A stretch of DNA of 62,983 nucleotides, filler included, from Hyphochytrium catenoides (GCA_900088475.1; 16 parts of 16 records of this genome joined end to end with filler, not necessarily neighbours in it); one strand, 5' to 3'. Counted from the whole stretch's first letter, positions 16,101 through 32,422 are shown. Translations and numbers: made by a program. Notes: generated by a model from the sequence alone, not told the origin.

Positions 16101-17499
16101 AGTTTCAAACTCTCAGGGTCCACAGAGTTCGTGTGGTTTATGTAAGCAATTTTGGTACAACTACAACAGAGTAGGTCCAATTGTAGCGGCCTCGGGAGAT
16201 GTCTGTGTGTTCGTCGTATGTTTGCTGACACAAAGAGAGAGGTAGAGACAGGTCTCGAGACAGAACGTGGAGAGAGAGAAAATTGAAGAGAAAGAGGGAG
16301 AGGAAGAACGAGAGAGAGAGAATGAAAAGGGGAGAGAGAGAGACGGAGAGAGAGAGACAGAGGCAGAGAGAGACAGAGAGACAGTCAGAGAGACAGAGAC
16401 AGAGAGAGACACAAAGAGGGTGAGAGAGAGAGCAAACGCACATACAGAGAGAGGACAGCAGGCAGACAGAGAGACGGCAACAGACAGAAAGAGAGACAGA
16501 GAGATTAGAAAGAAGCATTATTGCTGCCTCTGATTCAACCAGTACAAAAGAGAGACAGAGCGAGAAGCAGAGAGAGGGGGACATAGAGAAAGAACCAGTA
16601 CAAAAGAGAGACAGAGCGAGAAGCAGAGAGAGGGAGACATAGAGAAAGACAGACAGAGAGCGAGCGAGAGAGAGAGAGTTGGTGATGGAGTGCGACTACT
16701 GCTCCGAGCTGTAGCTCTTCTGAGAGGAGCAGCAGAGAACAAGGAGCAAGGAGCGGTGCGAGCAGCGAAGCTTACACAGAGGAAAGGAGCGCAAGAGGAG
16801 CAGCTGCGAAAGAGAGGAAAGCAAGCAGAGGCCCAGAGGAGCTTTCCCTGAACCTCCGTGCCCGGCGTGCAGACCGCCTGTTCCCCTCCTCTCTCTTTCC
16901 CTCTCCTGCAATTTCCAGGGGTGATCGGTCTGACGCTGGCTGGTAGCACTTGATCTCTACTTCTTCTTTCTCTCTTCTTGAGTGCAAGCACCTGCCTCTT
17001 GTCAAGCCCTTTGGCGTCATTGGCCGCTTTTCCGGGAGGGAAGAGGGCGCGCACGGAGCTAGTAAATTCTTACGGACCAGACAGTCCTCTGCAGACGCGA
17101 AGCGGGGCAAAGAAGCCACAAGGAGGGGAGACAGAGAGAGAGAGANNNNNNNNNNNNNNNNNNNNNNNNNNNNNNNNNNNNNNNNNNNNTTAATTAATTA
17201 ANNNNNNNNNNNNNNNNNNNNNNNNNNNNNNNNNNNNNNNNNNNNAGAGAGAGAGAGAGAGAGAGACAGAAAGAAGACAGAGTCGCTGCGCTCGCGGCAC
17301 TCTTGTTCAAGCTCTGGATGGTCTGGCTTCGGAAGCAGAGCTTTTTGCTGTGACACCTTTACCTCATCCTCGCTTGGCCGTGTCCTTCCTTGGTCGAGCT
17401 GCAGAGCTTTCTAAATTGCTGTCCTGGTTAGCACTCTTAGAAGACGGTCAAGGGCATTGGAGGGACGAAGAGATCAGCGATAGAAAGCTAGTGAGCACG

Positions 17500-20400
17500 A
17501 TGGCTGGCGATGCTGAAGTGTCAGAGACAGAGGAGGCTGTCCTAGGGCAGGAGGAGGTGGATCCAAACTTTACCCAGGATGCCGGGCTTGAGAACAGTCC
17601 AGGCAGGAAGCGCCCTCCCTCTGGAGAGGATGAAGGGGAGCCAAGGTAAGCTTTTTATCTTGTCTATGATAAGAACAGACGCAGAGCAAAAGGAAGCCTT
17701 ATCAAGTTTCTCTCTCTCTCTCTCTTCTCTTACAACCATTAGCCCTGAAGATGGCATTGAAGGACATTCCCCGACAACAAAGGGTAAACAAAAGGCTAAA
17801 CGTCAGAAAAGGGTGGCGGATGACGAGGAGGAGGGCGAAGACGAGGGAAGGCATCAGTCCGAAGCCGGCATCATCCTGAAGGTCAATGTGCAGAATTTCA
17901 TGTGCCATCCCAACCTCACTGTGCGAATGAATCGGCACATCAACTTTATTACGGGCCAGAATGGTAGCGGCAAGAGTGCCGTTCTGTGTGCTCTCCAGAT
18001 CTGCCTGGGAGCTAGTGGTAAGTCACTCTTAGCAGCTCTGGCTGATGCAGGCGAACCCCACTAGCTATTTCTCAATCTCTCATTAACTGGTGGTGTCTCT
18101 GCAGCGAGAGTCACTCATCGTGGCAAAGGACTTAAGGATCTTATTCGTCACGGCTCTCACCAGCCCGCTTTTGCCAGAGTCACCCTCTCTAACACCGGCA
18201 AGTCTTGGCTTCCCTTGCCTCTTCCTCCTCTTACTTAGCCCACTGACAATCCTTACCCTCTTTCTTCTCTCTCTGCTGCGACTTCTCGTCATGGTCTTCC
18301 CCCTCCCTTCCCCAGGCCCCGATGCCTACAGACCAGACGAGTTTGGCCCTAAGCTGACAGTAGAGCGGAAGATTCTGCCCTCAGGAACGTCAGAGTACCG
18401 GCTGTTGGACCACAATGGTCATTTGGTGTCTAAGAAGCGCTCCGACCTGGTTACCATGCTTGATCGCTTCAATATCCAGGTACAGAAGAAGCTCTGCTTA
18501 CCGTCACACGTGCCCCTCTCTGGATACCTTGGGTGGCGCTCCATCAACTTAGATACTTTCTACAGGCTCTGAAGTTGGCTGTTCTCTCTCCTGAAACAGA
18601 TCGATAATCCTTGTGCTGTCCTGGACCAAGAAGAGGCTAAGAAGTTTTTGAAAGGAGACAACAAGGAGAAGTATTCTTTCTTTCTTCGTGCCACCGATTT
18701 GAAGAAGATGAAGGTCACCTACGCTGAGATAGAACATGAGATCGAAGTAACCCAGACGGTCATGGCACAGCAAGAAGCTAAGCTTGAAACCTTGCGCAAA
18801 GAAGTAATGGAGGCGAAGAAGCTTTGTGAGGAGGCGGGTAAAATGAAAGAGCTAGAAGAGCAGGTAGAAAAGGCCCTGAAGAAGCCTTCCATGACCTGCA
18901 GGTCGCACTAATCTGCTTCTTATTCCTAGGTCAACATGCTCAAGATTAAGCTGGTGAGAACGCAGCTGAAGGAAGAGGAAGATAAACTAACCGCTCTCAG
19001 GGACACACTCCAAAAGGCTCAGGCCAAGTACCAGAGGTACATACTTCCATCTCCTCTCTCCTCTCGCGAGCACGAGCTAACCTAGATTCTTGGTGATGGC
19101 AGCTACCTGTCTGAATATGAAAGACAGAGAGAGGAGGAGCTCATAGAAAGAGAGAGACTGGAAGCTAAGCAGGCAGAGATGCAGGAGCTCAACCATCAGT
19201 ATCAAGAACGAAAGGAACAGGAGGACCAGCTTGTCAGAGAAATCCAGAGACTGAAGAAGCCGATGAGGGAGTTTGAGGTTCGCGATAGATCCTTCCCTTG
19301 CATTGTTTATCTTGCTGCTCGTTAACTTAGCCACCACATCCCTTCAGGCACAACTGAAGGGTTTGGACAAGCGGCTGCAGCAGCAAAAAGCACAGCATAG
19401 AGAGGCCATCTCCGAGCTCTCCAGAATCCAAAACGAAGCCTTGAATCGGAACAAGGATAGCCAACAGAGGCAGCAAGAATTTCTGCTGAGAGCTGAGGAA
19501 GATCTTGCACGCAAGAATAACGAGCACGCCCTGCATATCGAGGTAGCTCAGCCTCCTCTCTTACAACCCTGTGCTACCAGAAGTCCAACCTCCCCTTACC
19601 CTGTCTCCCTGCGTTCCTGCCTTCTTTCTCTCTCTCTTCCCGGTCCCTTCTCTCCTTCTCTCTCTCGTTCTTTCAATCTCTAACTGTATATCTCTACCTC
19701 TCGCTATTCAGGACCGCCAGAGAATTCAGCAAGAACTTGAAGCTAAAGGGGAGGAGGAGCATCGGTGCAAGGAGATGCTGGAGCAAGCCAATCATCAATA
19801 CAACCAAGCAAGTGGGAGGCTCAAGGCTTTACAGAGCCAGAGGACAAACAAGTAAGATTCTTTAGGTGCCATGAACAAGCTCGTAGCGGTTGTGCTTACA
19901 CTCTTTTCTCGGCCAGGGCTGCTCTCTTTGGTGCCAGAATGGGTGCTCTTCTGGAGGCTATTCAAAGAAATATAAGGCGCTTCTCTGCACCTCCGATTGG
20001 TCCAATTGGGATGCACGTAAAGCTAGCGGAAAGGAACAAAGACTGGGTGAGATCAGTTGTCTGTTGGAGTCCAGCAATGATTGATGGCAGCCAGTTGACA
20101 GCCATCGCACTTAGGCAAAAGCTATCGAAGCATGTCTCGGCTCCACTCTGGCCATGTTTATTGTGCACAGGTCGGAGGACAAGACTCTTATGGATGAATT
20201 GCGGCGTCAGGTTCGCACGGCAGAATGACAAGTGCTCTTTATGGTTCTCATCTTATCCCTTGTACTATCTAGGTTGGCGCCAAGGCTGGTGAGGGAGCTT
20301 GTCTGATTGCAAAGAAGGGCGGATCCCGTTACAATCAGCTTCGTCTGCCTGAGGGCGAGTTAAGGGCAAAGGCCATTGCCCTGCTCATTGACGTTGATAA

Positions 20401-22966
20401 TGACGAAGTCTACAACGCCTTGATTGACCAGACACAAATGGAGAGCAAGGTAAGGAAACTCTAGGTTATGCGGCAGCAAGGATCTCTTGGCCTCTGATGC
20501 TAGAGCCTGCGAGAAGTTAGTCACTAGGAGAACGAGGAAGAAACGGCCAGCTCACTTCGCTTCATCCTCACAGCTAGTCTTCCAAAATATCCATGAGCTG
20601 CGTGCTATGATGCTTCTGGGCCCAGATGGCCACTTGAAGACGCCGAAGAATGTTAAAGAAGGCTACGTCCCTGACGGCTCTAAGGTCTACGTCCGTAATG
20701 GGAACGACACCTTCGTGGCCTCATGGAATAGAGGTCCCAGTCGGCTTACCACCAACGTGGAGGATCAGATTGCGGTTCTTGAGGAACAAGTCCAAACAAG
20801 TCAGAGGGAAATGGTATGTCTGAACTATTTCCTCTCTCTAACTGTCTTCCTGGTGAACCATTTAGTCTTCTTCCTCTAACCATTGTCAACGCATGGCATC
20901 ATTCCTCTCCTGTTTAGAATGTCCACAGGGCCAATCAGCAGGAGATCCGTCGAGCTATCAATATGCTAAAGCAGGAACTGGCTGCCGTGAACAAGCTGAT
21001 CAATGCGGATCTAAAGCAGATTGCTCAAGCAGAGGACAAAATCAAAGATATAAGGGACGCAGTAGCAGAAGTACGTAGCACTGCTAACCCATGGCACACC
21101 AAAGAAAGAGGCCTCTTAGACGCTGTTAGAAACAGAAAAATGGCTAAGATTACTGGCACTATTGGATCCCCGACAACCATGAAAGACGGGTGAAGGACTA
21201 ATGTTCCCTCTAATTGACAGGACACTGAGATGGACACCAGCGCCCTCGAACAGGAGATCCAAGACCACGACAACAAGATTCAGAGTCTCATGGAGAACAG
21301 AGAGGCTATAATAGAGAGAATAGAGGCAAAGAAAGCGGAGCTCCTACCGTACGAGGTATGCTGTCTTCTGTTATATCTTCTACTCAATGACAGACATACT
21401 CATCGGCTCTTGGTCTAGCAACAATTGCAAGCGTTTAGGGGACAATCGCACGTGGACCAGTTCCAAGAGGAGCTAGCTAGAGAGCTTGAGGCCATGGGTG
21501 AGAAGCTCTCCGATGCCAACAAGAAAACGCAGGTGCTTCACAGAAAGGCAAATCAGCACAAGGCTAGCGCCGCCAACTTAGAAAAGGAGTTCAGAGCAGG
21601 AGAGGTATGGAACCATGCCTGCTTATATGTAGACGATACTCTTCCTAAAGGTCTGACCTCCGACAGCAAAATCTTCTGGAAGTAAGAGCCAAAACTGAAC
21701 TCTTGGAAGCGAAGATAGACTATCCCTATGCAGACAAAATAAGACTGAAGGAGCCAGCAGCAGATGTAAGATCTGCCCTCCTTATAGCGAAGGTAAGAAG
21801 GTAGCTTGTGTGGCAAGCAAAGCCCTATCCTCTGCCTCTCTCACATCTTGGCATACTAGAAACGTGTAGAACAGCATCAAGCAAAGTTCAATGTCCTAGA
21901 TTCGGCCGAGCTGTTCCAGCGTTATGACGATCTCAAGCGTAAGCTAGAGGTGAAGCAAGATGGCTATGAAAAGGTAGCGATCGGCTCTAGCACCCCTTAT
22001 GTCTGGGAGTGTTGACTAAGCAAGAACATCCTCCAGGTGAAGTACAACTCAACACAGCTGCGGAGTATGATGGACAAGAGGAATGACATGTGGAAGAAGT
22101 TCCAAAAGTCTATCAGCACCACCGTCTCGGCCGGCTTCGGTCTCACTTTGAGCGAGAAGAATATGTTGGGAAGCATCCAGTTTGACCATAAGAACCAGAC
22201 TCTGGAGCTCAAGGTCAGCCATTAAGCGCCACATTCTCCTCTCAGAAAAGGAGAAAACCATGATTTCTAATGCTTTGTCTTAGGTCAACCAGAATGCTCG
22301 TTCCTCGACCACTGTAGACAGCGATGTGAAGACACTGTCCGGCGGAGAGAGGTGAGCACCTTGTGGACGCAAGAAAGGCCCTTCACCTCTACCATCGCCT
22401 TGGCTCTCTTTATCGTGCTCTTGCCTTGTTTCTGGTGGTGCTTGCATTTGCATTGTGATTAGCCTGAGCATTCGCAATCTCCATTCCTTTCTCGACGACA
22501 CGTTAACTGTCATTTCTAATGCTGAGCACTATCCGGGCTGCTCTTGGTCCATTTATTACTTTAGGTCTGCTGTCCAGCTTGCCTTCTTATCAGCCGTTGG
22601 CGCGGTCTCCGATTGCCCCTTCCGGATTATGGACGAGTTTGACGTTTACATGGACAACAAGAACCGAACCACAGCGCTAAACAACCTGGTGGAGATGGGA
22701 CTCAACAACCCAGGGAAACAGTTCATCTTCATCACACCAAATGACATAAGGTTAGCCATACCTACGCAATGATGGACCCTGTGAGGTGGTAGATAGACTT
22801 TGTAACCCTTTTCTTGTGTTACCTCTGCAGCTCGATCGATATGAAGAAAAGCCCTGAGAAGATTGGCATCGTTAGAATGAGACCGCCTAGGCCAGCTGGA
22901 CCTTCAGGCACCACCCAGTCAACCATCAACTTCGGCCACGCCCAGCATGCCGCTCATGAAGATTGA
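17500..22966 (+). CDS. SMC6: SMC6 paralogue 1 (complete, about 22 exons)
   Basis: NFMCH, Walker A GQNGSGKSA, NIQIDNPCAVLDQEEAKKFL, hinge PPIGPIG, signature LSGGERS, Walker B/D-loop PFRIMDEFDVYMD and QFIFITP. ATG 17500, TGA 22964-22966, and the splice phases join in frame. Confidence 0.95.
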
Positions 22967-23578
22967 GCAGCTTCTTCATGGAAGGTCCTTTGAGACTTGA
23001 GAGCTATAGAAGCAGAGAGATCTCTTCGCAGTTCAATGTTTATAGCAAGAGTATATATCTACCACTAAGAAGATTGCCTGTCCTTCTCATGGACTCTCAT
23101 CATATCAAACAGCGACCTCCCCGGTTGCCAATCGATACCCAGCAAGCGCAGATCTCCGTCATCTTTCTGAAGATTCAGACGAAGATCTGTGATTCCAGAA
23201 AAGAAAGTGACAAAAGAACTTGACTCAAAAAAACTAATGTTCACGTTTGCCCTACTGATCTTTTGAAATTCTGATTTTCCCGCGCTTTTTTATCGTTCTG
23301 AATGGCTTTTTGTGAACTTGTTGCTGTGAAGATTCTGAAGCTTTTCAATGGCACCAAAAGCTCAATAAAAAGATCTCTGGAAAGTGAGAGCTCTTTGCTG
23401 AGGCTCGGCTCGACAGCTGTAGCTGGCCCGGCAAGTTTGCTGGCTGTACGATGACTAGTAGCAGCTGTCTCTGATGGGTAAGATCGCCTATTGACTCCTA
23501 GCGCCAGGTAGCCACCCGATGCCCAACCTTCGCTGTTTTGGATGAGGGCACGGTGCCAGCAAGAAAGGCAACTCTACG

Positions 23579-26500
23579 ATGTCTCCACACAGTCTGGCAG
23601 AGCATGCTGCGACCTTAGACAATAGAAGAAAGCGCCGGAGTCGGGAGGATGTCGGAGACAGCCGGGAGTACAAGTAAGTAGCGCACGGAGAGCTGTCTGT
23701 GAGGTAGAGAGGAGCCGCGTGGATGCGTAGGCCTCTTATTTGTTGACATTATCGCCCCAGCGATGGGAATGAGCCTTCTTCAGATGATGGTGCCCCCGGT
23801 TCGGTGCACGGCAGTCCTAAACGAAGGAAAGGACCCGGAGAACTCACACCAGAGCCTCCGGAGGCCGGCGTCATTGTGGAGGTCAATGTGCAGAACTTCA
23901 TGTGCCATGCGAACTTTACGGTTAAGCTGAACCGTCACATTAACTTCATAACCGGACAAAATGGCAGTGGCAAGAGTGCCATTCTCTGCGCTATCAAGAT
24001 ATGTCTTGGCGCCAGCGGTAAATGTCTTGTACAGAGTCGTGCTATCTCAGGCAACCGTCATCTTAGTTATTAGCGCTTTTGTCACCTTTCTTATGTCAGC
24101 GAGAGTTACTCATCGAGGAAAAGATCTGAAGAGTCTCATTCGCCATGACTCGCCCAACCAGCCTGCCTTTGCCAGGGTCACCCTATGTAACGTCGGTAAT
24201 TGGTCTTCCGTGTGGGAATACGCTGCCTCGCATGATACATGACCTTCATCTGCCCACGACGCCAGGCCCTGATGCCTACCGGCCAGAAGAGTTCGGCACC
24301 AAGATCATGGTGGAGAGAAAGATCCAGCCCTCGGGGACATCAGAATATCGACTACTAGCGCATAACGGGCAGCTGGTGTCCAAGAAGCGAGTTGACCTCA
24401 TCACTATGCTTGACCGCTTTAACATTCAGGTGAGGCAGCCAAGAGGACCTACAATGGTATATCTGGAGCGAGAACATCTCAGCCTTAACATAACAACAAG
24501 AGAGAGGGGACGGTTAGAGCCCGCCATCACAAAGAACAGAGTGCTGTTGTCTCAAGTTCTACTTTCTTCTCCATAGATTGATAACCCTTGCGCGGTGCTG
24601 GACCAAGAAGAAGCCAAGCTCTTCATCAAGGGTAACAGCAAGGAAAAATACTCTTTCTTCCTCAGGGCTACCGATATGACGAAGATGCAACTCTTGTATG
24701 GAGAGATCGAGAAAGAATGTGCCGTTATGAGAACTGTCATGCAGCAGCAGGAGAAAAAGATGGAGATACTGGAGAGCGAGGTTGCCGAGGCGCGGCGAGT
24801 GTGGAAGGAAGCGGCCAAGATGCAACAGCTGGAGGAGCGGGTTTGAGTCTGCAGCGACTTTTCTCTCGTTTCACCTCCTAAGAGCTCTCTTTCTAATGGC
24901 TGCAGGTTTCTATGCTGACAATCAAGCTTGTACGGACGCAAGTTAAGGAGGAAGAGGATAAGCTCCAACTGCTTAGAGAAGCCGTGGACAATGCTAGAGA
25001 TGGTTACCAGCGGTACGCCACATCTATCACAGCTATCGCATGGGACGGGACTCTTACAATGAGTCCTTAGTCTGCTGCAGAAATATGAGACGCAGAAAGA
25101 GGAAGAATCGGTGGAAAGAGAGAAGCTAGAGGCCAAACAGGCAGAGCTGCAGGCACTGAATGAGGAGTACGCAGAGAAAAAGGAGCAGGAAGATCTGCTG
25201 GCCCGGGAGATTCAAAAGATGAAAGTCCCGATAAGAGAGTTCAAGGTAGGTTCTCTCTCGAAGGCACATAAAGACGGGAGCTTTGACGAATTTGATGCTT
25301 CTGCGGCCCTTCCCTTGGGTGGTAGAGCAAAGTAAAGGACATTGATAATAGGATAAGTAAAGCGAAGATGCTCCAGCGAGAGGCGATCACAGAGCTGTCT
25401 CGACTGCAAAATGAAGCTCTCAGAGGCGAAAAGGATAAGAAAGAGAAAGAGCAGAGACTCTTGCTGGAGGCGGAGGAGGAGCTTGAAAGACAGAAGGATC
25501 AAAACAAGAAGCATCTTGAGGTCTGTCTTTCTGTTGGACGAGTGGACGATGCACATTGACACTACGTCTATGACCTCTACTTTTTTCTGTTGCTTTGCAA
25601 TTCTTACCACGGCTTTCTGGCTCTCTCTCATATTTGTTCTTCTTCTCTCTGTTTCCAGGAGCAAAGGGATATTCTTGACCAGCTGGAAGCAAAAGAGGAG
25701 GAATATCGACAATGCAAGGAGCAACTGGCAAAAGCTCATGAACACTTTCAGAGGTCCTCAGGCAGCTTGCGATCCCTTGAAAGTCAAAGTACCAACAGGT
25801 CTGCTGCTTCTATATACATGACTTGTAAGACACGGACCGCAACCTCTGACATCCCTTTACTCTCGTAGAGCTGCTCTTTTTGGCAGCCGCATGGGGGCCT
25901 TGCTGGAAGCTATCAGAACCAATATCCACCGTTTCTCGAGCCCGCCAATCGGTCCCATTGGATTGTATGTCAAACTGCCTGAGAGTGAGAAGCAATGGGT
26001 AGGTGACCAAACTTGTGAGAGGGAAAGACCCCCTTTATCTTTCTTCTTCCGTAGTGCCGACAATGTAGCAACTGGTGCCTCTCTCTGTCACCCTTGCTCT
26101 CTCCTTTTCTTTGTCCGTCTTTCTCTGTCTCTATCCTCCTGCTGACCTCCTGCATCTAATCAGGCTACTGCTATTGAGGCTTGCATCGGCAGCACTCTCT
26201 CCACCTTTATCATTCAGAGAGCAGAGGATAAGCCACTTATGGACGAGCTTCGTCGACGGGTAAGGGGTCACAGTATCGAGAGAAGCAAAAAAGTGGAAGG
26301 TCCCAACCATACGCGAGTTGACAACCAATCCACGGACAAAAGAACTTGTCCGGAATACTGCTTATATGTCGCTGTTTCATCCACACAGGTCGGAGCAAGG
26401 GCAGGCGAAGGCAACGTCGTAATTGTTCCCAGAGCCTCAAGCCGCTATACGCAGCTTCGATTGCCCGAGGGCGAGCTTCGGTCAAGAAGTGTGGCGATGA

Positions 26501-27052
26501 AGATTGAAGTAGAGAACGACCAAGTATTTAATGCGCTTATAGACCAGACAGGGATGGAGGGCAAGGTAAGCGCCACCAACCCTAAGCGGTACAGCTAGGG
26601 CAAATCAGGGGAGGATAAAGAGATCAGGGAGAGAGAAAGGAGGAGAACTCAAAAGTGAACACGGAGAATACCCGGTATGGATGGTTGTCCTGCTAGAACA
26701 ATAGCTGGTCGGGCAAGGGCTTCAAGATCCCTGCACTGCTTAGCGAGGACGAAACCTAACCCTTCGCTGTTTGACAGGTGGTCTTCAAGGACATTCACGA
26801 GCTGCGTGCCCTCATGCTCTTGGGGCCAGAGGGCAATAAGAGAGCCCCGAAGAATGTAAGGGAAGGTTATATTCCTGACGGCTCGAAGGTCTACCTCAGG
26901 AACGGCAATGATACGTTTGTCTCGGGATGGAGCAAGGGAGCCAGTCGACTTACAGTCAACGTCGAGGACAGGATCGCGGCTTTGCGGGAAGAAGTCCAAG
27001 CCCAACAGGCTGAGATCGTTAGTACATTAATGCTCCCCTGACTGCGCTACCA

Positions 27053-27101
<49 letters not shown>

Positions 27102-27154
27102 ACTGGCACGCGGTAAATGAGTTACACTCTCTCTCTTTCATTACTTCTTTGTCG

Positions 27155-27190
<36 letters not shown>

Positions 27191-30100
27191 GACTCTCACA
27201 CAACTGGCACGCGGTAAATGAGTTGCACTCTCTCTCTTTCGGTACTTCTTTGTCTGACTCGCCATCCATCACTTTCCTTCACTTTCCCACATTGCTATTC
27301 ATAATGTGCTGCCTATTGTCACCATCGGGAACTCTGTGCATACCTCGCTCTGACTGCTATGCTCGTCTCTGCTCTCTGACCTCTGCGACCCTTGCTCTTT
27401 TGCATTATGTCTGCTTTGGCGATGACACAGGCCATTCACAAGGCAAAGTTGGAAGAGATTCAGCGCTCCAAGCAGGGCCTGGAGCAGGATAAGGCAAGGG
27501 TGGACCGGCTGATTGCTAGGGACAACAGCGAGATCCCTCGAGCAGAAAGAAAGATTAAGGACTTACGGGATAGCCTTGCAGAGGTAAGAATAACAACAGG
27601 AAAATAATGCTTTCAACGGGCTGAAGGATGGGGAGACAAGGACCAAGCTCTGGGTGGTGGCCTATCGTCCTCTTTGTTCCCCTCTCCCCCTCCGGGGCCT
27701 TTTTTTAACTCTCTCCTCTCTCTTTCTCTCTCCTCTCTCTCCCTCACCGTCGTCTTTGATGATATTAGGAAACAGAGGTCGACACAACGGCTATTGAGCA
27801 AGAAATCGAGGATTACAACCAGCAGATGGAGGAACTCAGTGCCAAGAAAGAAGAGATCTTAGAGAGAATCGAGGCCAGAGAAGGAGAGTTAGAGCCCTAT
27901 GAGGTATGGAAGAACCTAGCTAGCTAGGTGGTGTCCTCAAAGGTGTCCTCCCTTGGAGGGGTCAATAGAAGGGAAAAGAGATGGATGGAGAGGAAGGAAA
28001 AGCGAGGGTCTCAGAGAGGGAGAGAGCGACAAGCAGTGTCAAAGAGACCGTCAAAACCTACCGGAAGAATCGCTACACCTTTCACTCACTGAGGCTTCAC
28101 CGCAGTCTCGACTGGAATCCCTGAGATTCGAGAACCAAATAGAGGTTCGGCAGGAACAGATGGAGAAAGAGCTGGAGAGCATGACGGCAAAGCTGGAGGA
28201 TCAAGCCCGCAGGACTAGGCGTAGGCTGAAGGCTGTCAGTGAACATGAAGCCGCTGTCTCCACACTAGAGCAAGATTTTCGAGAGAAACAGGTTCGTCTT
28301 CGTCTCATAAATCTCTTTCTCTGAGAAGGATGACCGGTACAAATAAGCCAGAGATGGGGCTCACCTTCCGCTCCCTTGTAGGCAAAGCTCCCAGAAGTTA
28401 AGGCAAAGGCTGCGAGAATTGAGCAGAACGAGAATTATCCCCATGGTGATAGAATCGAGCTTGGAGAACCATCCCATAAAGTTAGAGAGGCCTTAGACGT
28501 CACAAAAGTAGGGAAGGAGTATCTTTGCACCTCTCTCCTGCGTATACGTTACTTACTCGCATCTTTTCTCGTCAGTACGGCTCTCTCTTGCATCTTTCAT
28601 CCCTTAGCCTCCTACTTACGATCTATGTGAGGTCTCTCTTCATCTCTTTGGCTGACTCTCTCCTTCCTAGAAACGCGTAGAGCAGCATCGAGCCAAGTAC
28701 AAAGTCGTTGACTCTGCGGATCTTCTTCACCGCTATGAAGGTCTCAAAAGCAAGCTTGAAGGAAAGCGCGAGGCCTATCGCACGGTAGAGTCTGTCAACT
28801 CTCTGGCTTTGACCTTCTCTTCTATCATTAAGACTTATCCTCGCTAGTCTCAACGCCTTCTTCAGAGGTCTCTATCTCTATCTGGTGGTCTCTCGCTCTC
28901 TCTCCGTCCCCCTGAGGCAGACTTCACTCTTTATCTGCCCCTTGCACTTGAGCTATCCTTGATATTGCGCTTCTCTCCTTCCTCATTAAGTTCCATCCAC
29001 TTCACCTTCCAAGCGGTCTGTTCTACCATTCTCTTCTGTCATTCTCTTGATTATACGGTCAGTCTTGCTTCTCCTTTCCATGCTCAGGCTAGAGGTTTAT
29101 GCAGGCCTTACTCTGACTTCCGTCGTCCTCTCTGTGCCAGGTTGAGGAGAATCTCAGCATCATTGAGAAAATGCTGATCTCCCGTGAGAAGTTATGGAGC
29201 GAGTTCTCAGTGGCACTTTCCCGCGCTGTGTGTTTGGAGTTCTCCCGTCTTTTGTGTGAGAAGAATATTCAAGGTCGGATTCTGCTGGATCATGCCAAGA
29301 AGACGCTGGACTTCAAGGTAGATAGGGCTTCTCTGAGTTTCCTCCCCCAATTATCTGGCCCCTAAGACCTTTGAGCTCATTATGTTTCAGTCTATGGCAT
29401 TACTTTCACTTCTGCCTGAAGCACTATTGCTATTGTCTCTTTGATAGATAGGTGGACTCTCCGTGTTTCTTCTTTGCAAATGACTACCAAGCTCTACTAA
29501 GAGGTCTGCCACTAACTGCTGCTGAAGATTGAAGGCAAGGGAGCGACAGTCTCTGCCCGAGAGGGAGACAGCGCCGGTAAAAGGAGGAAGAAAAAGGATG
29601 CTCAAAATGCTGGGGTCGACATGTCTGCGGTTGAGCCCAGTGAGAGCGAGAAGGAGAAAGAAAAGACAGACTCCAGTACTTTGTCAGGAGGAGAGAGGTA
29701 AGCCTTGCTTCATTATATATCTGACCGTACGAATAATTGCTCACATTCTTTTTGGCTCTTCTTCCTTCTCCATTCTCCATCATGCAGGTCAACAGTCCAG
29801 CTAGCTTTCTTAGCTGCTGTGGGCCAGTCTTCGGACTGTCCTTTCCGGATTTTCGATGAATTTGATGTTTATATGGACAGTAAGAACCGCACCACGGCCC
29901 TCAACAGCCTGGTGGAGATGGGTCTCAATCGTTCGACGCAGCAGTATATCTTCATCACGCCCAATGACTTGAGGTAGAGGGAAATGTTTTTGATTCTTTC
30001 TTCCTCTCTCTTCTTCTACCTGCCCTTTGGCTCTCGCTTCCTCATCTGAGGAAGGTGCTTTTCAAATTCTACTCTATCTTAGCTAACGCCACAGATTCCC

Positions 30101-30481
30101 TCTTGGTCTCTCTTGCCTTAGGCGAACTGTGCCTTTACTCCTCTTAAAATGTCTGACAAACCTTCTATACTCTCCTCTCCCCCCCTCCCCTCTTTTCTTC
30201 CTCTCTCTCTCTCTTTTTGTCTTCCCTCTCCCCCCGCCTCTCTCTCTCTCTCTCTCTCTCGCTCGCTCTCTCTTCATTCTCTCTCTCTTCTCTTTGTCTC
30301 TGTGCTCATGCCTTACCTCTATCATTTCTTTCTCCAACCCAACTCTCTCTATCTCTATAGCTCGATCGATCGAGAGAGCGCTGGCGCCATGCTGTCGATG
30401 CACAAACTGAGGGCTCCACGCTCCCCGGCCGATGCCGCCACCGCCGCGGCAGCAGGTCGGGAGGGCAGCAGAAGCCCCTAA
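23579..30481 (+). CDS. SMC6: SMC6 paralogue 2 (complete, intron positions shared with paralogue 1)
   Basis: NFMCH, GQNGSGKSA, IDNPCAVLDQEEAKLFI, PPIGPIG, LSGGERS, PFRIFDEFDVYMD and QYIFITP. ATG 23579, TAA ending 30481. Confidence 0.93.
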
Positions 30482-31191
30482 AGCCAGCCCTCATCCTATT
30501 TATTTCGTGATTCTCTATTTGAAGTGACACCTAGCACTTATGTTAGGCATAGGAAATAGCATATAGAGGTCAAATTAGGCCTTTGCTTCTGTTTACCTCC
30601 TTGTTTTGTCGTGGTGCTTCGAATCAAACTAATCTATTTGATCTAATTAATCTATGGCTCAGCTATAGTCGTATTAAACTCATGTTGGGACATTAGGCTC
30701 GCTTACGAGATCTAAAGTTTGTTCAAATAAAAACACATTATAGCAGTCTTATATAGGAGCTTGTAAGGTTAATCCGGACTTCTTCGCTTTTTGGGAGGAT
30801 TGTTGAGGGACCGAAACGGCCTTGGGCTTCTGATGCTGTGGCGTGCCGCTTGGAGACCTGCCGTCTCATGACTCGGCAGCCGGTCTGCAGATGGAGCTCA
30901 GGTGAAGCTCGCATGGAGACTGTAGCTTTCAAGTCTCCAGCCATAGAACTCCATGCTAGCCCCAGACGGCCAAAGAGGCAATGCGGCTACGTGTAGTCCG
31001 TCCCACAGTTAGCGCTAGAGGAGGTCGACTGGAGGTGAAAGGCAGCCTTCTTAGAGCTATAACTACAGGCCAAGTCTTCTTTGCACTTGGCGGAAACGAG
31101 ATGCTCACGGGTCAGCTAGACTACTGAAGGAAGTAGGTCAGGGGCAGTCAAAGAACAGGCAGGGTGCTTTCCAATCAACCTGAACAGAGCT

Positions 31192-31809
31192 ATGGGTCCA
31201 AAGACTGCCACAAAGAAGCGCTCCGCTCCAGCCACGGCAGAGGAGGAGGACCGTGACCGAGAAGAAGAAGACGATGAAGATAGGTAGGCCAGTCGTTTAA
31301 GGAAAGGAATGTGGAGAGAGGTATTAACGAGAGAGACTTCAAAGGAGCGGGGAAGAGAGCATGATGGAGAAAGTATGCCCTTAGACAAGAGTTGGAATTC
31401 TCTAATTGCCATTTATGCAGTGCTGAGGAGCTGCAGTCCTCGTCTGAGGCCATTCCTCGTCAACCTGGTTCCCTAGCTAGACAGAAGGCAAAGCGCCCAC
31501 GTACAGAGGCGCCAAGAGAAAGACAGCAACGGACTCTCCAAAGTGAGCCGGGAGTCATACAAGAAATAACGGTTGAGAACTTCATGTGCCATCGGAAGCT
31601 GAAGGTGAAGCTGAACCCTTCGATCAACTTCATCACGGGGCAGAATGGGAGTGGAAAGAGTGCCATTCTGTGTGCTCTGCAGATCTGTCTTGGAGCCAGT
31701 GGTGAGGGGCGATGTCAGGATGGCGACGCAATGCTTATTTTTGTCTGAGAAGCTTTCTTTAGTGACAATGGCTGTTGTCTCTCTTCTTTCTCTCTCCCTC
31801 TCATTCTCT

Positions 31810-31846
<37 letters not shown>

Positions 31847-32173
31847 CTCGCTCTCTCTTTCTCTCTTTCTTGCGCGCTGTCTCTCCTTTTCTCTTTCTTG
31901 CGCTCTCTCTCTCTCATTTTCTCTCGCTCTTGCACTATCTCTTTGCGGGCCGTCGTCCCTGATGCTGCAGCTTCCTTATTCGTGGCATTGTACTTTTCTC
32001 ATATCCCGCTGGTCCTTGGTTTGCCCTTTCTTCCTCGTGCTTACTCCCTCTTGGTTACCTTTCCGCGTGACTTCTAGCTAAAGTCACCCATCGAGGGAGA
32101 GGCTTGAGGGATCTCATCCGCCATGGCTCCGCTAGCCAGCCTGCGTATGCTCGGGTAACCCTTTGTAACACGG
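31192..32173 (+). CDS. SMC6: SMC6 paralogue 3, first three exons only (cut by the spacer at 32250)
   Basis: EPGVIQEITVENFMCHRKLKVKLNPSINFITGQNGSGKSAILCALQICLGAS|AKVTHRGRGLRDLIRHGS, with the same intron positions as the other two copies. Confidence 0.9.
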
Positions 32174-32422
32174 GTGCGGGTCTCCCACTCTGTCTCTCGG
32201 ACTCTTTTGGTCTCTTTCCTCTCTCTCTCTTTCCCTCTCTCTCTCTCTCNNNNNNNNNNNNNNNNNNNNNNNNNNNNNNNNNNNNNNNNNNNNTTAATTA
32301 ATTAANNNNNNNNNNNNNNNNNNNNNNNNNNNNNNNNNNNNNNNNNNNNAGAGAGAGAGAGAGGAATACAGGGAGACAAAAGTGGAGAGAGAAAGTCTAC
32401 AGAGGGAGAGGAAAGAAGGAGA

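What the first reader, a model, noticed from the sequence alone, without database searches (positions are those of the whole stretch)
17500..32249. Tandem array of three diverged SMC6 genes: candidate specialised Smc5/6-like complexes
Seen: three head-to-tail SMC6 genes on one gap-free contig, separated by about 0.6-0.7 kb. They share intron positions (DNA-level duplication) but have dissimilar intron sequences and N-terminal tails, so they are not haplotype or assembly duplicates. Copies 1 and 2 are full length with intact Walker A, signature and Walker B motifs, and copy 3 has an intact Walker A. Known: SMC6 is usually single copy (Arabidopsis has two), Smc5/6 silences extrachromosomal viral DNA (HBV HBx degrades it), and bacterial SMC-family Wadjet restricts plasmids. 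Inference: a retained, diverged triplication suggests alternative Smc5/6 complexes, for example for antiviral or anti-mobile-element surveillance, meiosis or life-stage-specific repair. This is the best candidate for an undescribed system in the window, but no function can be read from the sequence.
Basis: partly seen in the sequence, partly recalled or inferred. Interest (0 to 1): 0.8.

Follow-up and report, generated by a model that had tools for sequence, protein, structure and literature searches.

The report
Three old tandem SMC6 gene copies
A protist contig carries three ancient head-to-tail copies of the chromosome-maintenance gene SMC6, at least two of them intact and kept by selection; three copies are unusual, but lineage-specific SMC6 duplication is already known from Arabidopsis and Daphnia, and the sequence shows no new function.

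Summary
The piece (17246-32249, no N) holds three same-strand, intron-rich SMC6 genes. Copy 1 (17500-22966) has 22 exons and encodes 1160 aa. Copy 2 (23579-30481) has 22 exons and encodes 1131-1167 aa. Of copy 3, only exons 1-3 (31192-32173) lie before the piece ends. All 21 intron positions and phases are shared by copies 1 and 2, and the first three by copy 3. Intron and intergenic sequences are no more alike than shuffled sequence. Copies 1 and 2 are 56.6% identical in protein, with synonymous sites near saturation and dN 0.35 (omega roughly 0.2). Both keep every ATPase motif and about 90% of the residues invariant in other stramenopile SMC6. In trees the three copies form one clade, sister to oomycete SMC6, with copy 3 splitting first. 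These are therefore two old, lineage-specific tandem duplications of an orthodox SMC6, not haplotypes, assembly artefacts or decayed pseudogenes. The most likely role is alternative, partly redundant or differently expressed SMC6 subunits of one Smc5/6 complex. An antiviral or other specialised role is untested: no RNA data were reachable, and the rest of copy 3 and the SMC5/NSE gene counts could not be read. This is a new member of a known kind, of modest interest.

The parts
17500..22966 (+). SMC6 copy 1: 22 exons, 21 introns (20 GT-AG, one GC-AG at 18198-18315), 3483-nt CDS, 1160 aa, intact
   Evidence: Junction enumeration and model check. One collinear tblastn HSP covers 1066 residues against a full-length environmental SMC6 ORF. 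PDB phmmer of three exons gives SMC6 as best hit.
17954..17977 (+). Copy 1 Walker A (GQNGSGKS). Other copy 1 motifs: Q-loop 18618-18635, signature LSGGERS 22335-22568 (split by intron 20), Walker B DEFDVYMD 22632-22655
   Evidence: Motif mapping, alignment with 14 stramenopile SMC6, Pfam AAA_23/SMC_N.
22967..23578 (.). 612-bp spacer between the copy 1 stop codon and the copy 2 ATG; no similarity to the other spacer
23579..30481 (+). SMC6 copy 2: 22 exons, all introns GT-AG, 1131 aa (1167 aa if exon 20 starts at 29528 instead of 29636), intact; introns total 3507 bp against 1984 bp in copy 1 and are rich in CT microsatellites
23954..23977 (+). Copy 2 Walker A. Other copy 2 motifs: Q-loop 24595-24612, signature 29681-29791 (split by intron 20), Walker B 29855-29878
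30482..31191 (.). 710-bp spacer between the copy 2 stop codon and the copy 3 ATG
31192..32173 (+). SMC6 copy 3, 5' part only: exon 1 31192-31283, exon 2 31421-31701 (Walker A 31638-31661), exon 3 32078-32173; intron 3 runs off the piece at 32249. 156 aa are visible, with intron positions and phases as in copies 1 and 2
   Evidence: 29 of 30 outgroup-invariant residues are kept.

Best explanation
The locus is a tandem array of at least three old, lineage-specific paralogues of the orthodox SMC6 gene, which encodes the nu-SMC ATPase of the Smc5/6 complex. The host is a stramenopile whose SMC6 is sister to that of oomycetes.

Shown:
- Two successive whole-gene tandem duplications took place, with copy 3 splitting first and copies 1 and 2 later.
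- Both happened long ago, because synonymous sites, introns and spacers are randomised.
- Copies 1 and 2, and the visible part of copy 3, have since been kept by purifying selection with all catalytic motifs.

Inferred:
- Each copy encodes a working SMC6 that pairs through its conserved hinge with SMC5 and through its conserved neck and head with the Nse4 kleisin. The cell can therefore build Smc5/6 complexes that differ only in their SMC6 subunit.
- The copies most likely persist through partial redundancy together with partitioned expression or partitioned tasks (replication-stress repair, meiosis or a life-cycle stage), as with Arabidopsis SMC6A/SMC6B.
- The unrelated spacers (promoters) and unrelated N-terminal tails are the most likely places where regulation differs.
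For: - Gene models: intact 22-exon ORFs of 1160 aa and 1131-1167 aa with canonical splice sites. 17 of 22 exons have the same length.
- SMC6 identity: PDB phmmer with three separate exons (N-head, neck, C-head) gives SMC6 chains as best hits, and SMC5 is weaker or absent. Copy 1 aligns collinearly with full-length SMC6 ORFs over about 1066 residues. Identity to oomycete proteins, some named SMC6 by their sources, is 33-35%.
- Age and selection: 56.6% protein identity, pS 0.80, pN 0.28, dN 0.35. Four-fold sites are 34.7% identical against 25.9% expected at random. My arithmetic from these figures gives dS about 1.6 and omega about 0.2. Head-core dN for pairs involving copy 3 is 0.15-0.17 with pS 0.63-0.76.
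- Conservation: of 111 columns invariant in 14 outgroup SMC6, copy 1 keeps 102 and copy 2 keeps 97; copy 3 keeps 29 of 30. Walker A, Q-loop, signature and Walker B are intact.
- Trees: copies 1 and 2 join with 100/100 support. Their clade is sister to oomycete SMC6 with support 1.0. In the head-only tree the three copies are monophyletic (90/94) and copy 3 lies outside copies 1+2 (91/94).
- Precedents: PMC9099584 (Arabidopsis SMC6A/B partly redundant, double mutant lethal) and PMC2680839 (Daphnia SMC6A/B).
Against: - There is no expression evidence: no RNA run holds the locus.
- The models rest on sequence alone, and the exon-20 acceptor of copy 2 is ambiguous.
- Only 156 aa of copy 3 are visible, so it could be truncated.
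- Pairwise dN/dS averages over both lineages and cannot exclude a burst of change in one copy. Copy 2 has the longer branch (0.50-0.56 against 0.33-0.34).
- Partner binding is inferred from conservation, not tested.
- The head-only tree uses 83 columns.
Confidence: 0.7

Rival explanations
1. Neofunctionalised paralogues: one or two copies have become subunits of a specialised Smc5/6-like complex, for example one that restricts extrachromosomal viral or mobile DNA or is dedicated to meiosis, with a mechanism distinct from the housekeeping complex.
For: - The copies have been retained over a very long time.
- Copy 2 evolves about 1.5 times faster than copy 1.
- The N-terminal tails are unrelated.
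- Copy 2 may carry an optional Lys-rich insert before the signature motif.
- If the host is Hyphochytrium catenoides (inferred only), its genome holds giant-virus-derived insertions (PMC5795050), and a survey table lists 4 SMC6 but single SMC5 and Nse1-4 (10.1101/2024.01.07.573240, Suppl. Table 1).
Against: - All catalytic motifs and about 90% of outgroup-invariant residues are kept in both full copies.
- Head, neck and hinge are the most conserved parts, which suggests unchanged partners and chemistry.
- There are no viral or mobile-element genes in or beside the array, and no Rfam hits.
- No expression or selection test for a shift was possible.
Confidence: 0.12
2. Copy 3 is a truncated relic or a pseudogene, so the array holds only two working genes. 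This is compatible with the main explanation for copies 1 and 2.
For: Only exons 1-3 lie on the piece, which ends in a TC microsatellite inside intron 3. No other contig with the rest of the gene could be found.
Against: - The visible 156 codons are open.
- The two complete introns are GT-AG, and intron 3 starts with GT at the homologous donor position.
- Walker A is intact.
- 29 of 30 outgroup-invariant residues are kept.
- dN to the other copies is 0.15-0.17 while synonymous sites are near saturation.

A gene dead since so old a duplication would not look like this.
Confidence: 0.15
3. Assembly artefact: collapsed or expanded haplotypes, or a misjoined repeat, mimic a tandem array.
For: - The assembly is fragmentary, and the piece ends in microsatellites.
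- The read check failed, so nothing was laid.
Against: - The copies differ at 43% of residues and at nearly all synonymous sites.
- Introns and spacers are unrelated.
- Two DNA runs from different samples hold 74-82% of the sampled words of a 10-kb stretch spanning the copy 1/copy 2 and copy 2/copy 3 spacers.
- There are no N gaps.
Confidence: 0.01

Closest known systems
Arabidopsis thaliana SMC6A / SMC6B
   Same: These are lineage-specific paralogues of orthodox SMC6 that serve one Smc5/6 complex with a single SMC5. They are partly redundant: single mutants look wild type and the double mutant is embryo-lethal (PMC9099584).
   Different: Arabidopsis has two copies at separate loci (At5g07660, At5g61460). 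Here there are at least three copies in a head-to-tail array 0.6-0.7 kb apart, in a stramenopile, and their function is untested.
Daphnia pulex SMC6A / SMC6B
   Same: Two SMC6 copies lie on the same scaffold and were interpreted as an old tandem duplication (PMC2680839).
   Different: The Daphnia copies are 165 kb apart and number two. Here the copies are adjacent and number at least three.
Canonical SMC6 of the Smc5/6 complex (for example PDB 7qcd_B and 9lwi_A)
   Same: It is the best hit for N-head, neck and C-head exons. It shares Walker A, Q-loop, LSGGE signature, Walker B and a length of about 1100-1200 aa.
   Different: Identity to the solved proteins is low and was measured only exon by exon. 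The N-terminal tails are lineage-specific.
Oomycete SMC6 (Phytophthora and Pythium proteins P0012, P0019, P0073)
   Same: It is the closest full-length relative at 33-35% identity and the sister clade in the tree. It shares the ITPND variant of the C-terminal head motif, where diatoms have ITPQD.
   Different: In the survey table of 10.1101/2024.01.07.573240, oomycetes have one or two entries (Saprolegnia 1, P. infestans 2). The genes here have 21 introns.
Bacterial Wadjet (JetABCD) anti-plasmid SMC system
   Different: Wadjet is a prokaryotic four-gene operon with a nuclease subunit. Nothing of that kind lies in this locus. These genes are eukaryotic SMC6 by sequence and tree.

Membership tests
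SMC6 (nu-SMC of Smc5/6) | N-terminal ABC-type head half with a Walker A P-loop | tested here: met
   GQNGSGKS is present in all three copies. Pfam AAA_23 scores above its cut-off, and SMC_N matches just below its own.
SMC6 (nu-SMC of Smc5/6) | C-terminal head half with the signature motif (LSGGE) and Walker B / D-loop (hhhhDEFDV) | tested here: met
   LSGGERS and FRI(M/F)DEFDVYMD are present in copies 1 and 2. This cannot be seen for copy 3.
SMC6 (nu-SMC of Smc5/6) | Full SMC architecture (head, arm, hinge, arm, head) of about 1100-1200 aa, collinear with known SMC6 | tested here: met
   A single tblastn HSP covers 1066 of 1160 residues of copy 1 against full-length SMC6 ORFs. blastp to oomycete SMC6 aligns over about 1100 residues. 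No fold was predicted, because the spliced protein has no reference.
SMC6 (nu-SMC of Smc5/6) | Closer to SMC6 than to SMC5 or other SMCs | tested here: met
   PDB phmmer results: N-head SMC6 4e-11 against SMC5 3e-7 to 3e-5; neck exon SMC6 only; C-head SMC6 1.4e-8 against SMC5 4e-3. The copies cluster with proteins named SMC6. No SMC5 sequence was included in the trees.
SMC6 (nu-SMC of Smc5/6) | Forms a heterodimer with SMC5 and binds Nse4 and the other Nse subunits | not testable with these tools
   The partner genes are not on the piece, and the spliced proteins could not be passed to the complex predictor.
Functional gene rather than pseudogene | Open frame, intact splice sites, dN much lower than dS, invariant residues kept | tested here: met
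   for copies 1 and 2. For copy 3 this holds only for the first 156 codons. Expression was not tested.
   No RNA run is available, there is no genome-wide view, and no complex prediction was possible.
Wadjet-like defence system | JetA/B/C/D-type gene set with a nuclease partner | tested here: not met
   The 15-kb piece holds only SMC6 genes. The spacers are 612 and 710 bp with no other conserved ORF.

The most novel reading that the evidence does not exclude
The three or more SMC6 paralogues, paired with a single SMC5 and a single set of Nse subunits, define functionally distinct Smc5/6 holocomplexes in a hyphochytrid-like stramenopile. At least one of them is dedicated to a non-housekeeping task, such as silencing or restricting integrated or episomal giant-virus DNA or a life-cycle-specific chromosome process.
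Probability: 0.1. Interest if true: 0.65.

Novelty: new member of a known kind. Interest (0 to 1): 0.3.

Why it matters
Smc5/6 is the least understood eukaryotic SMC complex, and its SMC6 subunit is normally single-copy. A natural system with three old, selected SMC6 variants next to each other, probably sharing one SMC5, would be a convenient case for asking which parts of SMC6 set the complex's task. The candidates are the arms and tails, which diverge here, and the head, neck and hinge, which do not. As it stands, the finding is a well-documented gene-family expansion without functional evidence. It matters mainly for annotating this genome and for surveys of SMC evolution. One such survey table already lists four SMC6 entries for Hyphochytrium catenoides, without comment.

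Tried and rejected
- Whole-library phmmer with the hinge exon stretch 20454-20876 returned only spurious beta-propeller and RING proteins.
- Sequencing runs: only three DNA runs from one study hold the locus and none is RNA, so expression could not be tested.
- Handling of places 31775-31868 afterwards: those letters were sent to no search tool. The Rfam scan stopped at 31770, and exon references avoid them. A self-comparison of the whole piece inside the closed sandbox did include them.
- The look-up of encoding contigs with three ATG ORFs of the piece found nothing on record, so the contig could not be extended and the rest of copy 3 was not found.
- The search for homologous proteins with the exon-5 alignment gave no hit. 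With a profile made of a full-length environmental SMC6 plus window exons as separate rows, it gave only oomycete, diatom and environmental SMC6 at 35% identity or less to copy 1. No close relative and no protein of this genome appeared.
- The metagenome scan gave 61 SMC6 loci, none close (about 28-34% over the full length) and none with a second SMC6 beside it.
- Rfam gave no hit, there are no tRNA genes, and Pfam finds nothing for single hinge or arm exons.
- Joined spliced proteins were built only inside sandbox scripts, from window coordinates, for alignment, dN/dS and trees.
- Rejected explanations: haplotype or assembly duplicate, recent duplication, SMC5 identity, horizontal or viral origin (the copies form one clade beside oomycete SMC6), and a Wadjet-like system.
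Full report
**What is there.** The piece 17246-32249 is gap-free eukaryotic DNA of about 50% G+C, and both ends lie in AG/CT microsatellites. A six-frame self-comparison shows three collinear sets of + strand coding blocks. I enumerated GT/GC-AG junctions that keep the frame between blocks and read the ends by eye. The resulting models are:

| Copy | Span | Exons | Protein | State |
|---|---|---|---|---|
| 1 | 17500-22966 | 22 | 1160 aa | intact |
| 2 | 23579-30481 | 22 | 1131 aa, or 1167 aa if exon 20 starts at 29528 rather than 29636 | intact |
| 3 | exon 1 31192-31283, exon 2 31421-31701, exon 3 32078-32173 | 3 visible | 156 aa visible | next intron runs off the piece |

Copies 1 and 2 have no internal stop. 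All introns are GT-AG except intron 3 of copy 1, which is GC-AG. The spacers are 612 and 710 bp.

- All 21 intron positions and phases coincide in copies 1 and 2, and 17 of 22 exons have exactly the same length.
- Copy 3 shares the first three intron positions and phases.
- Homologous introns are no more alike than shuffled sequence (47% against 42%), and the spacers share nothing.
- The N-terminal tails (88, 65 and 72 aa, each acidic with a basic cluster) do not align usefully.
- Walker A is present in all three copies. The Q-loop, signature and Walker B are present in copies 1 and 2.

**Identity.**
- Pfam finds AAA_23 and SMC_N in the head exons.
- phmmer against PDB sequences with three separate exons (N-head, neck, C-head) gives SMC6 chains as best hits each time, with SMC5 weaker or absent.
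- A metagenome scan with the exon-5 alignment fetched 61 SMC6 loci, many of them intron-less full-length ORFs. Copy 1 aligns to these in one collinear HSP over about 1066 residues at about 30% identity. This also validates the spliced model.
- A profile search returned oomycete and diatom SMC6. The closest are oomycete proteins at 33-35% identity, while diatoms are at 28-31%.
- The C-terminal head motif reads ITPND as in oomycetes, where diatoms have ITPQD.

**Age and selection.**
- Copies 1 and 2 are 56.6% identical over 1121 aligned residues. Heads are 76-80% identical, the hinge region about 64-66% and the arms 38-55%.
- pS is 0.80, pN is 0.28 and dN is 0.35.
- At 242 four-fold sites within identical residues, the third base is identical in 34.7% of cases against 25.9% expected at random. 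My arithmetic from these figures gives dS of roughly 1.6 and omega of roughly 0.2. This is rough, because the sites are near saturation.
- Of 111 alignment columns invariant in 14 oomycete, diatom and other stramenopile SMC6, copy 1 keeps 102 and copy 2 keeps 97. Copy 3 keeps 29 of the 30 it covers.
- In the 83-codon head core, copy 3 is 74-75% identical to the others (copies 1 and 2: 81%), with dN 0.15-0.17 and pS 0.63-0.76.

Intact 22-exon frames at this divergence exclude pseudogenes, haplotypes and assembly duplicates for copies 1 and 2.

**Phylogeny.**
- Copies 1 and 2 join with 100/100 support on a long stem.
- With named proteins added, their clade is sister to oomycete SMC6 with support 1.0. 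Copy 2 has the longer branch (0.50 against 0.33).
- A head-only tree of 83 columns makes the three copies monophyletic (90/94) and places copy 3 outside copies 1+2 (91/94).
- The array therefore arose by two successive tandem duplications after the split from the oomycete lineage, not by transfer.
- None of the environmental loci with long flanks shows a second SMC6 nearby.

**Organism (inference only).**
- The sister group of oomycetes is the hyphochytrids.
- Supplementary Table 1 of the preprint 10.1101/2024.01.07.573240 lists 4 SMC6 for Hyphochytrium catenoides, against 1 SMC5 and 1 each of Nse1-4. Other stramenopile genomes there have 1-2 SMC6. The main text does not discuss this.
- That genome is fragmentary and intron-bearing (PMC5795050), which fits a 15-kb contig that ends in microsatellites.
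- This is a lead and not a proof, because run and organism names were coded.
- The same table gives 2-3 entries for several other SMC-complex genes of that species. This may reflect fragmented or split models, and it tempers any claim that SMC6 alone is expanded.

**Mechanism.**
- Shown: the locus holds at least two, and probably three, selected orthodox SMC6 genes.
- Inferred: each copy makes an ATP-driven SMC6 that pairs with SMC5 at the conserved hinge and with Nse4 at the conserved neck and head. This would give Smc5/6 complexes that differ in the SMC6 arms and tail.
- The likeliest reason for retention is partial redundancy with partitioned expression or tasks, as in Arabidopsis SMC6A/B (PMC9099584). 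Daphnia has a similar pair (PMC2680839).
- A dedicated antiviral or meiotic complex is not excluded. H. catenoides carries giant-virus-derived insertions (PMC5795050), but nothing here supports such a role.

**Limits.**
- No RNA data were reachable.
- The rest of copy 3 and the partner genes could not be reached.
- The joined spliced proteins exist only in sandbox scripts.

**Verdict.** This is a real and well-supported tandem triplication of an orthodox SMC6. It is a new member of a known kind (lineage-specific SMC6 paralogy). The copy number is unusual, but there is no functional evidence. Interest is about 0.3.

Noticed in passing
window 18198-18315: Intron 3 of copy 1 has a GC donor (G|GCAAGT). 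Copies 2 and 3 have GT at the homologous donor (24196 and 32174).
   Followed up: partly
window 29318-29697: The acceptor of exon 20 of copy 2 is ambiguous. Several in-frame AGs lie between 29528 and 29636. The longest choice adds a 36-aa Lys/Glu-rich insert just before the LSGGERS signature motif, and the shortest matches the length in copy 1 and the outgroups but has a poor acceptor.
   Followed up: partly
window 27018-27430, 28785-29140, 29318-29635, 29974-30360: The introns of copy 2 total 3507 bp against 1984 bp in copy 1. The enlarged ones carry CT microsatellites, and intron 13 holds a 100-bp direct repeat (27056-27153 against 27152-27254, 87% identical).
   Followed up: partly
window 17246-17266 and 32211-32249: Both ends of the piece lie in AG/TC microsatellites, which probably caused the assembly breaks. 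The array may continue on either side, since only 254 bp lie upstream of the copy 1 ATG.
   Followed up: no
window 22731-22745 and 29954-29968: The C-terminal head motif reads ITPND, as in oomycete SMC6, whereas diatom and other ochrophyte SMC6 read ITPQD. This may be a lineage marker for pseudofungi.
   Followed up: partly
window 17500-17860, 23579-23860, 31192-31540: The three N-terminal tails are unrelated in sequence, but each combines acidic runs with a basic, NLS-like cluster (KAKRQKR; RRKRR and KRRK; KKR and KAKRPR).
   Followed up: no
Nothing was laid, and the stretch was kept out of all later searches.
   Followed up: no
L013, L019, L035, L037 (metagenome loci with 10-kb flanks): Environmental SMC6 loci with long flanks show a single SMC6 copy with no tandem partner, so the array is not a general feature of protist SMC6 loci.
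   Followed up: partly
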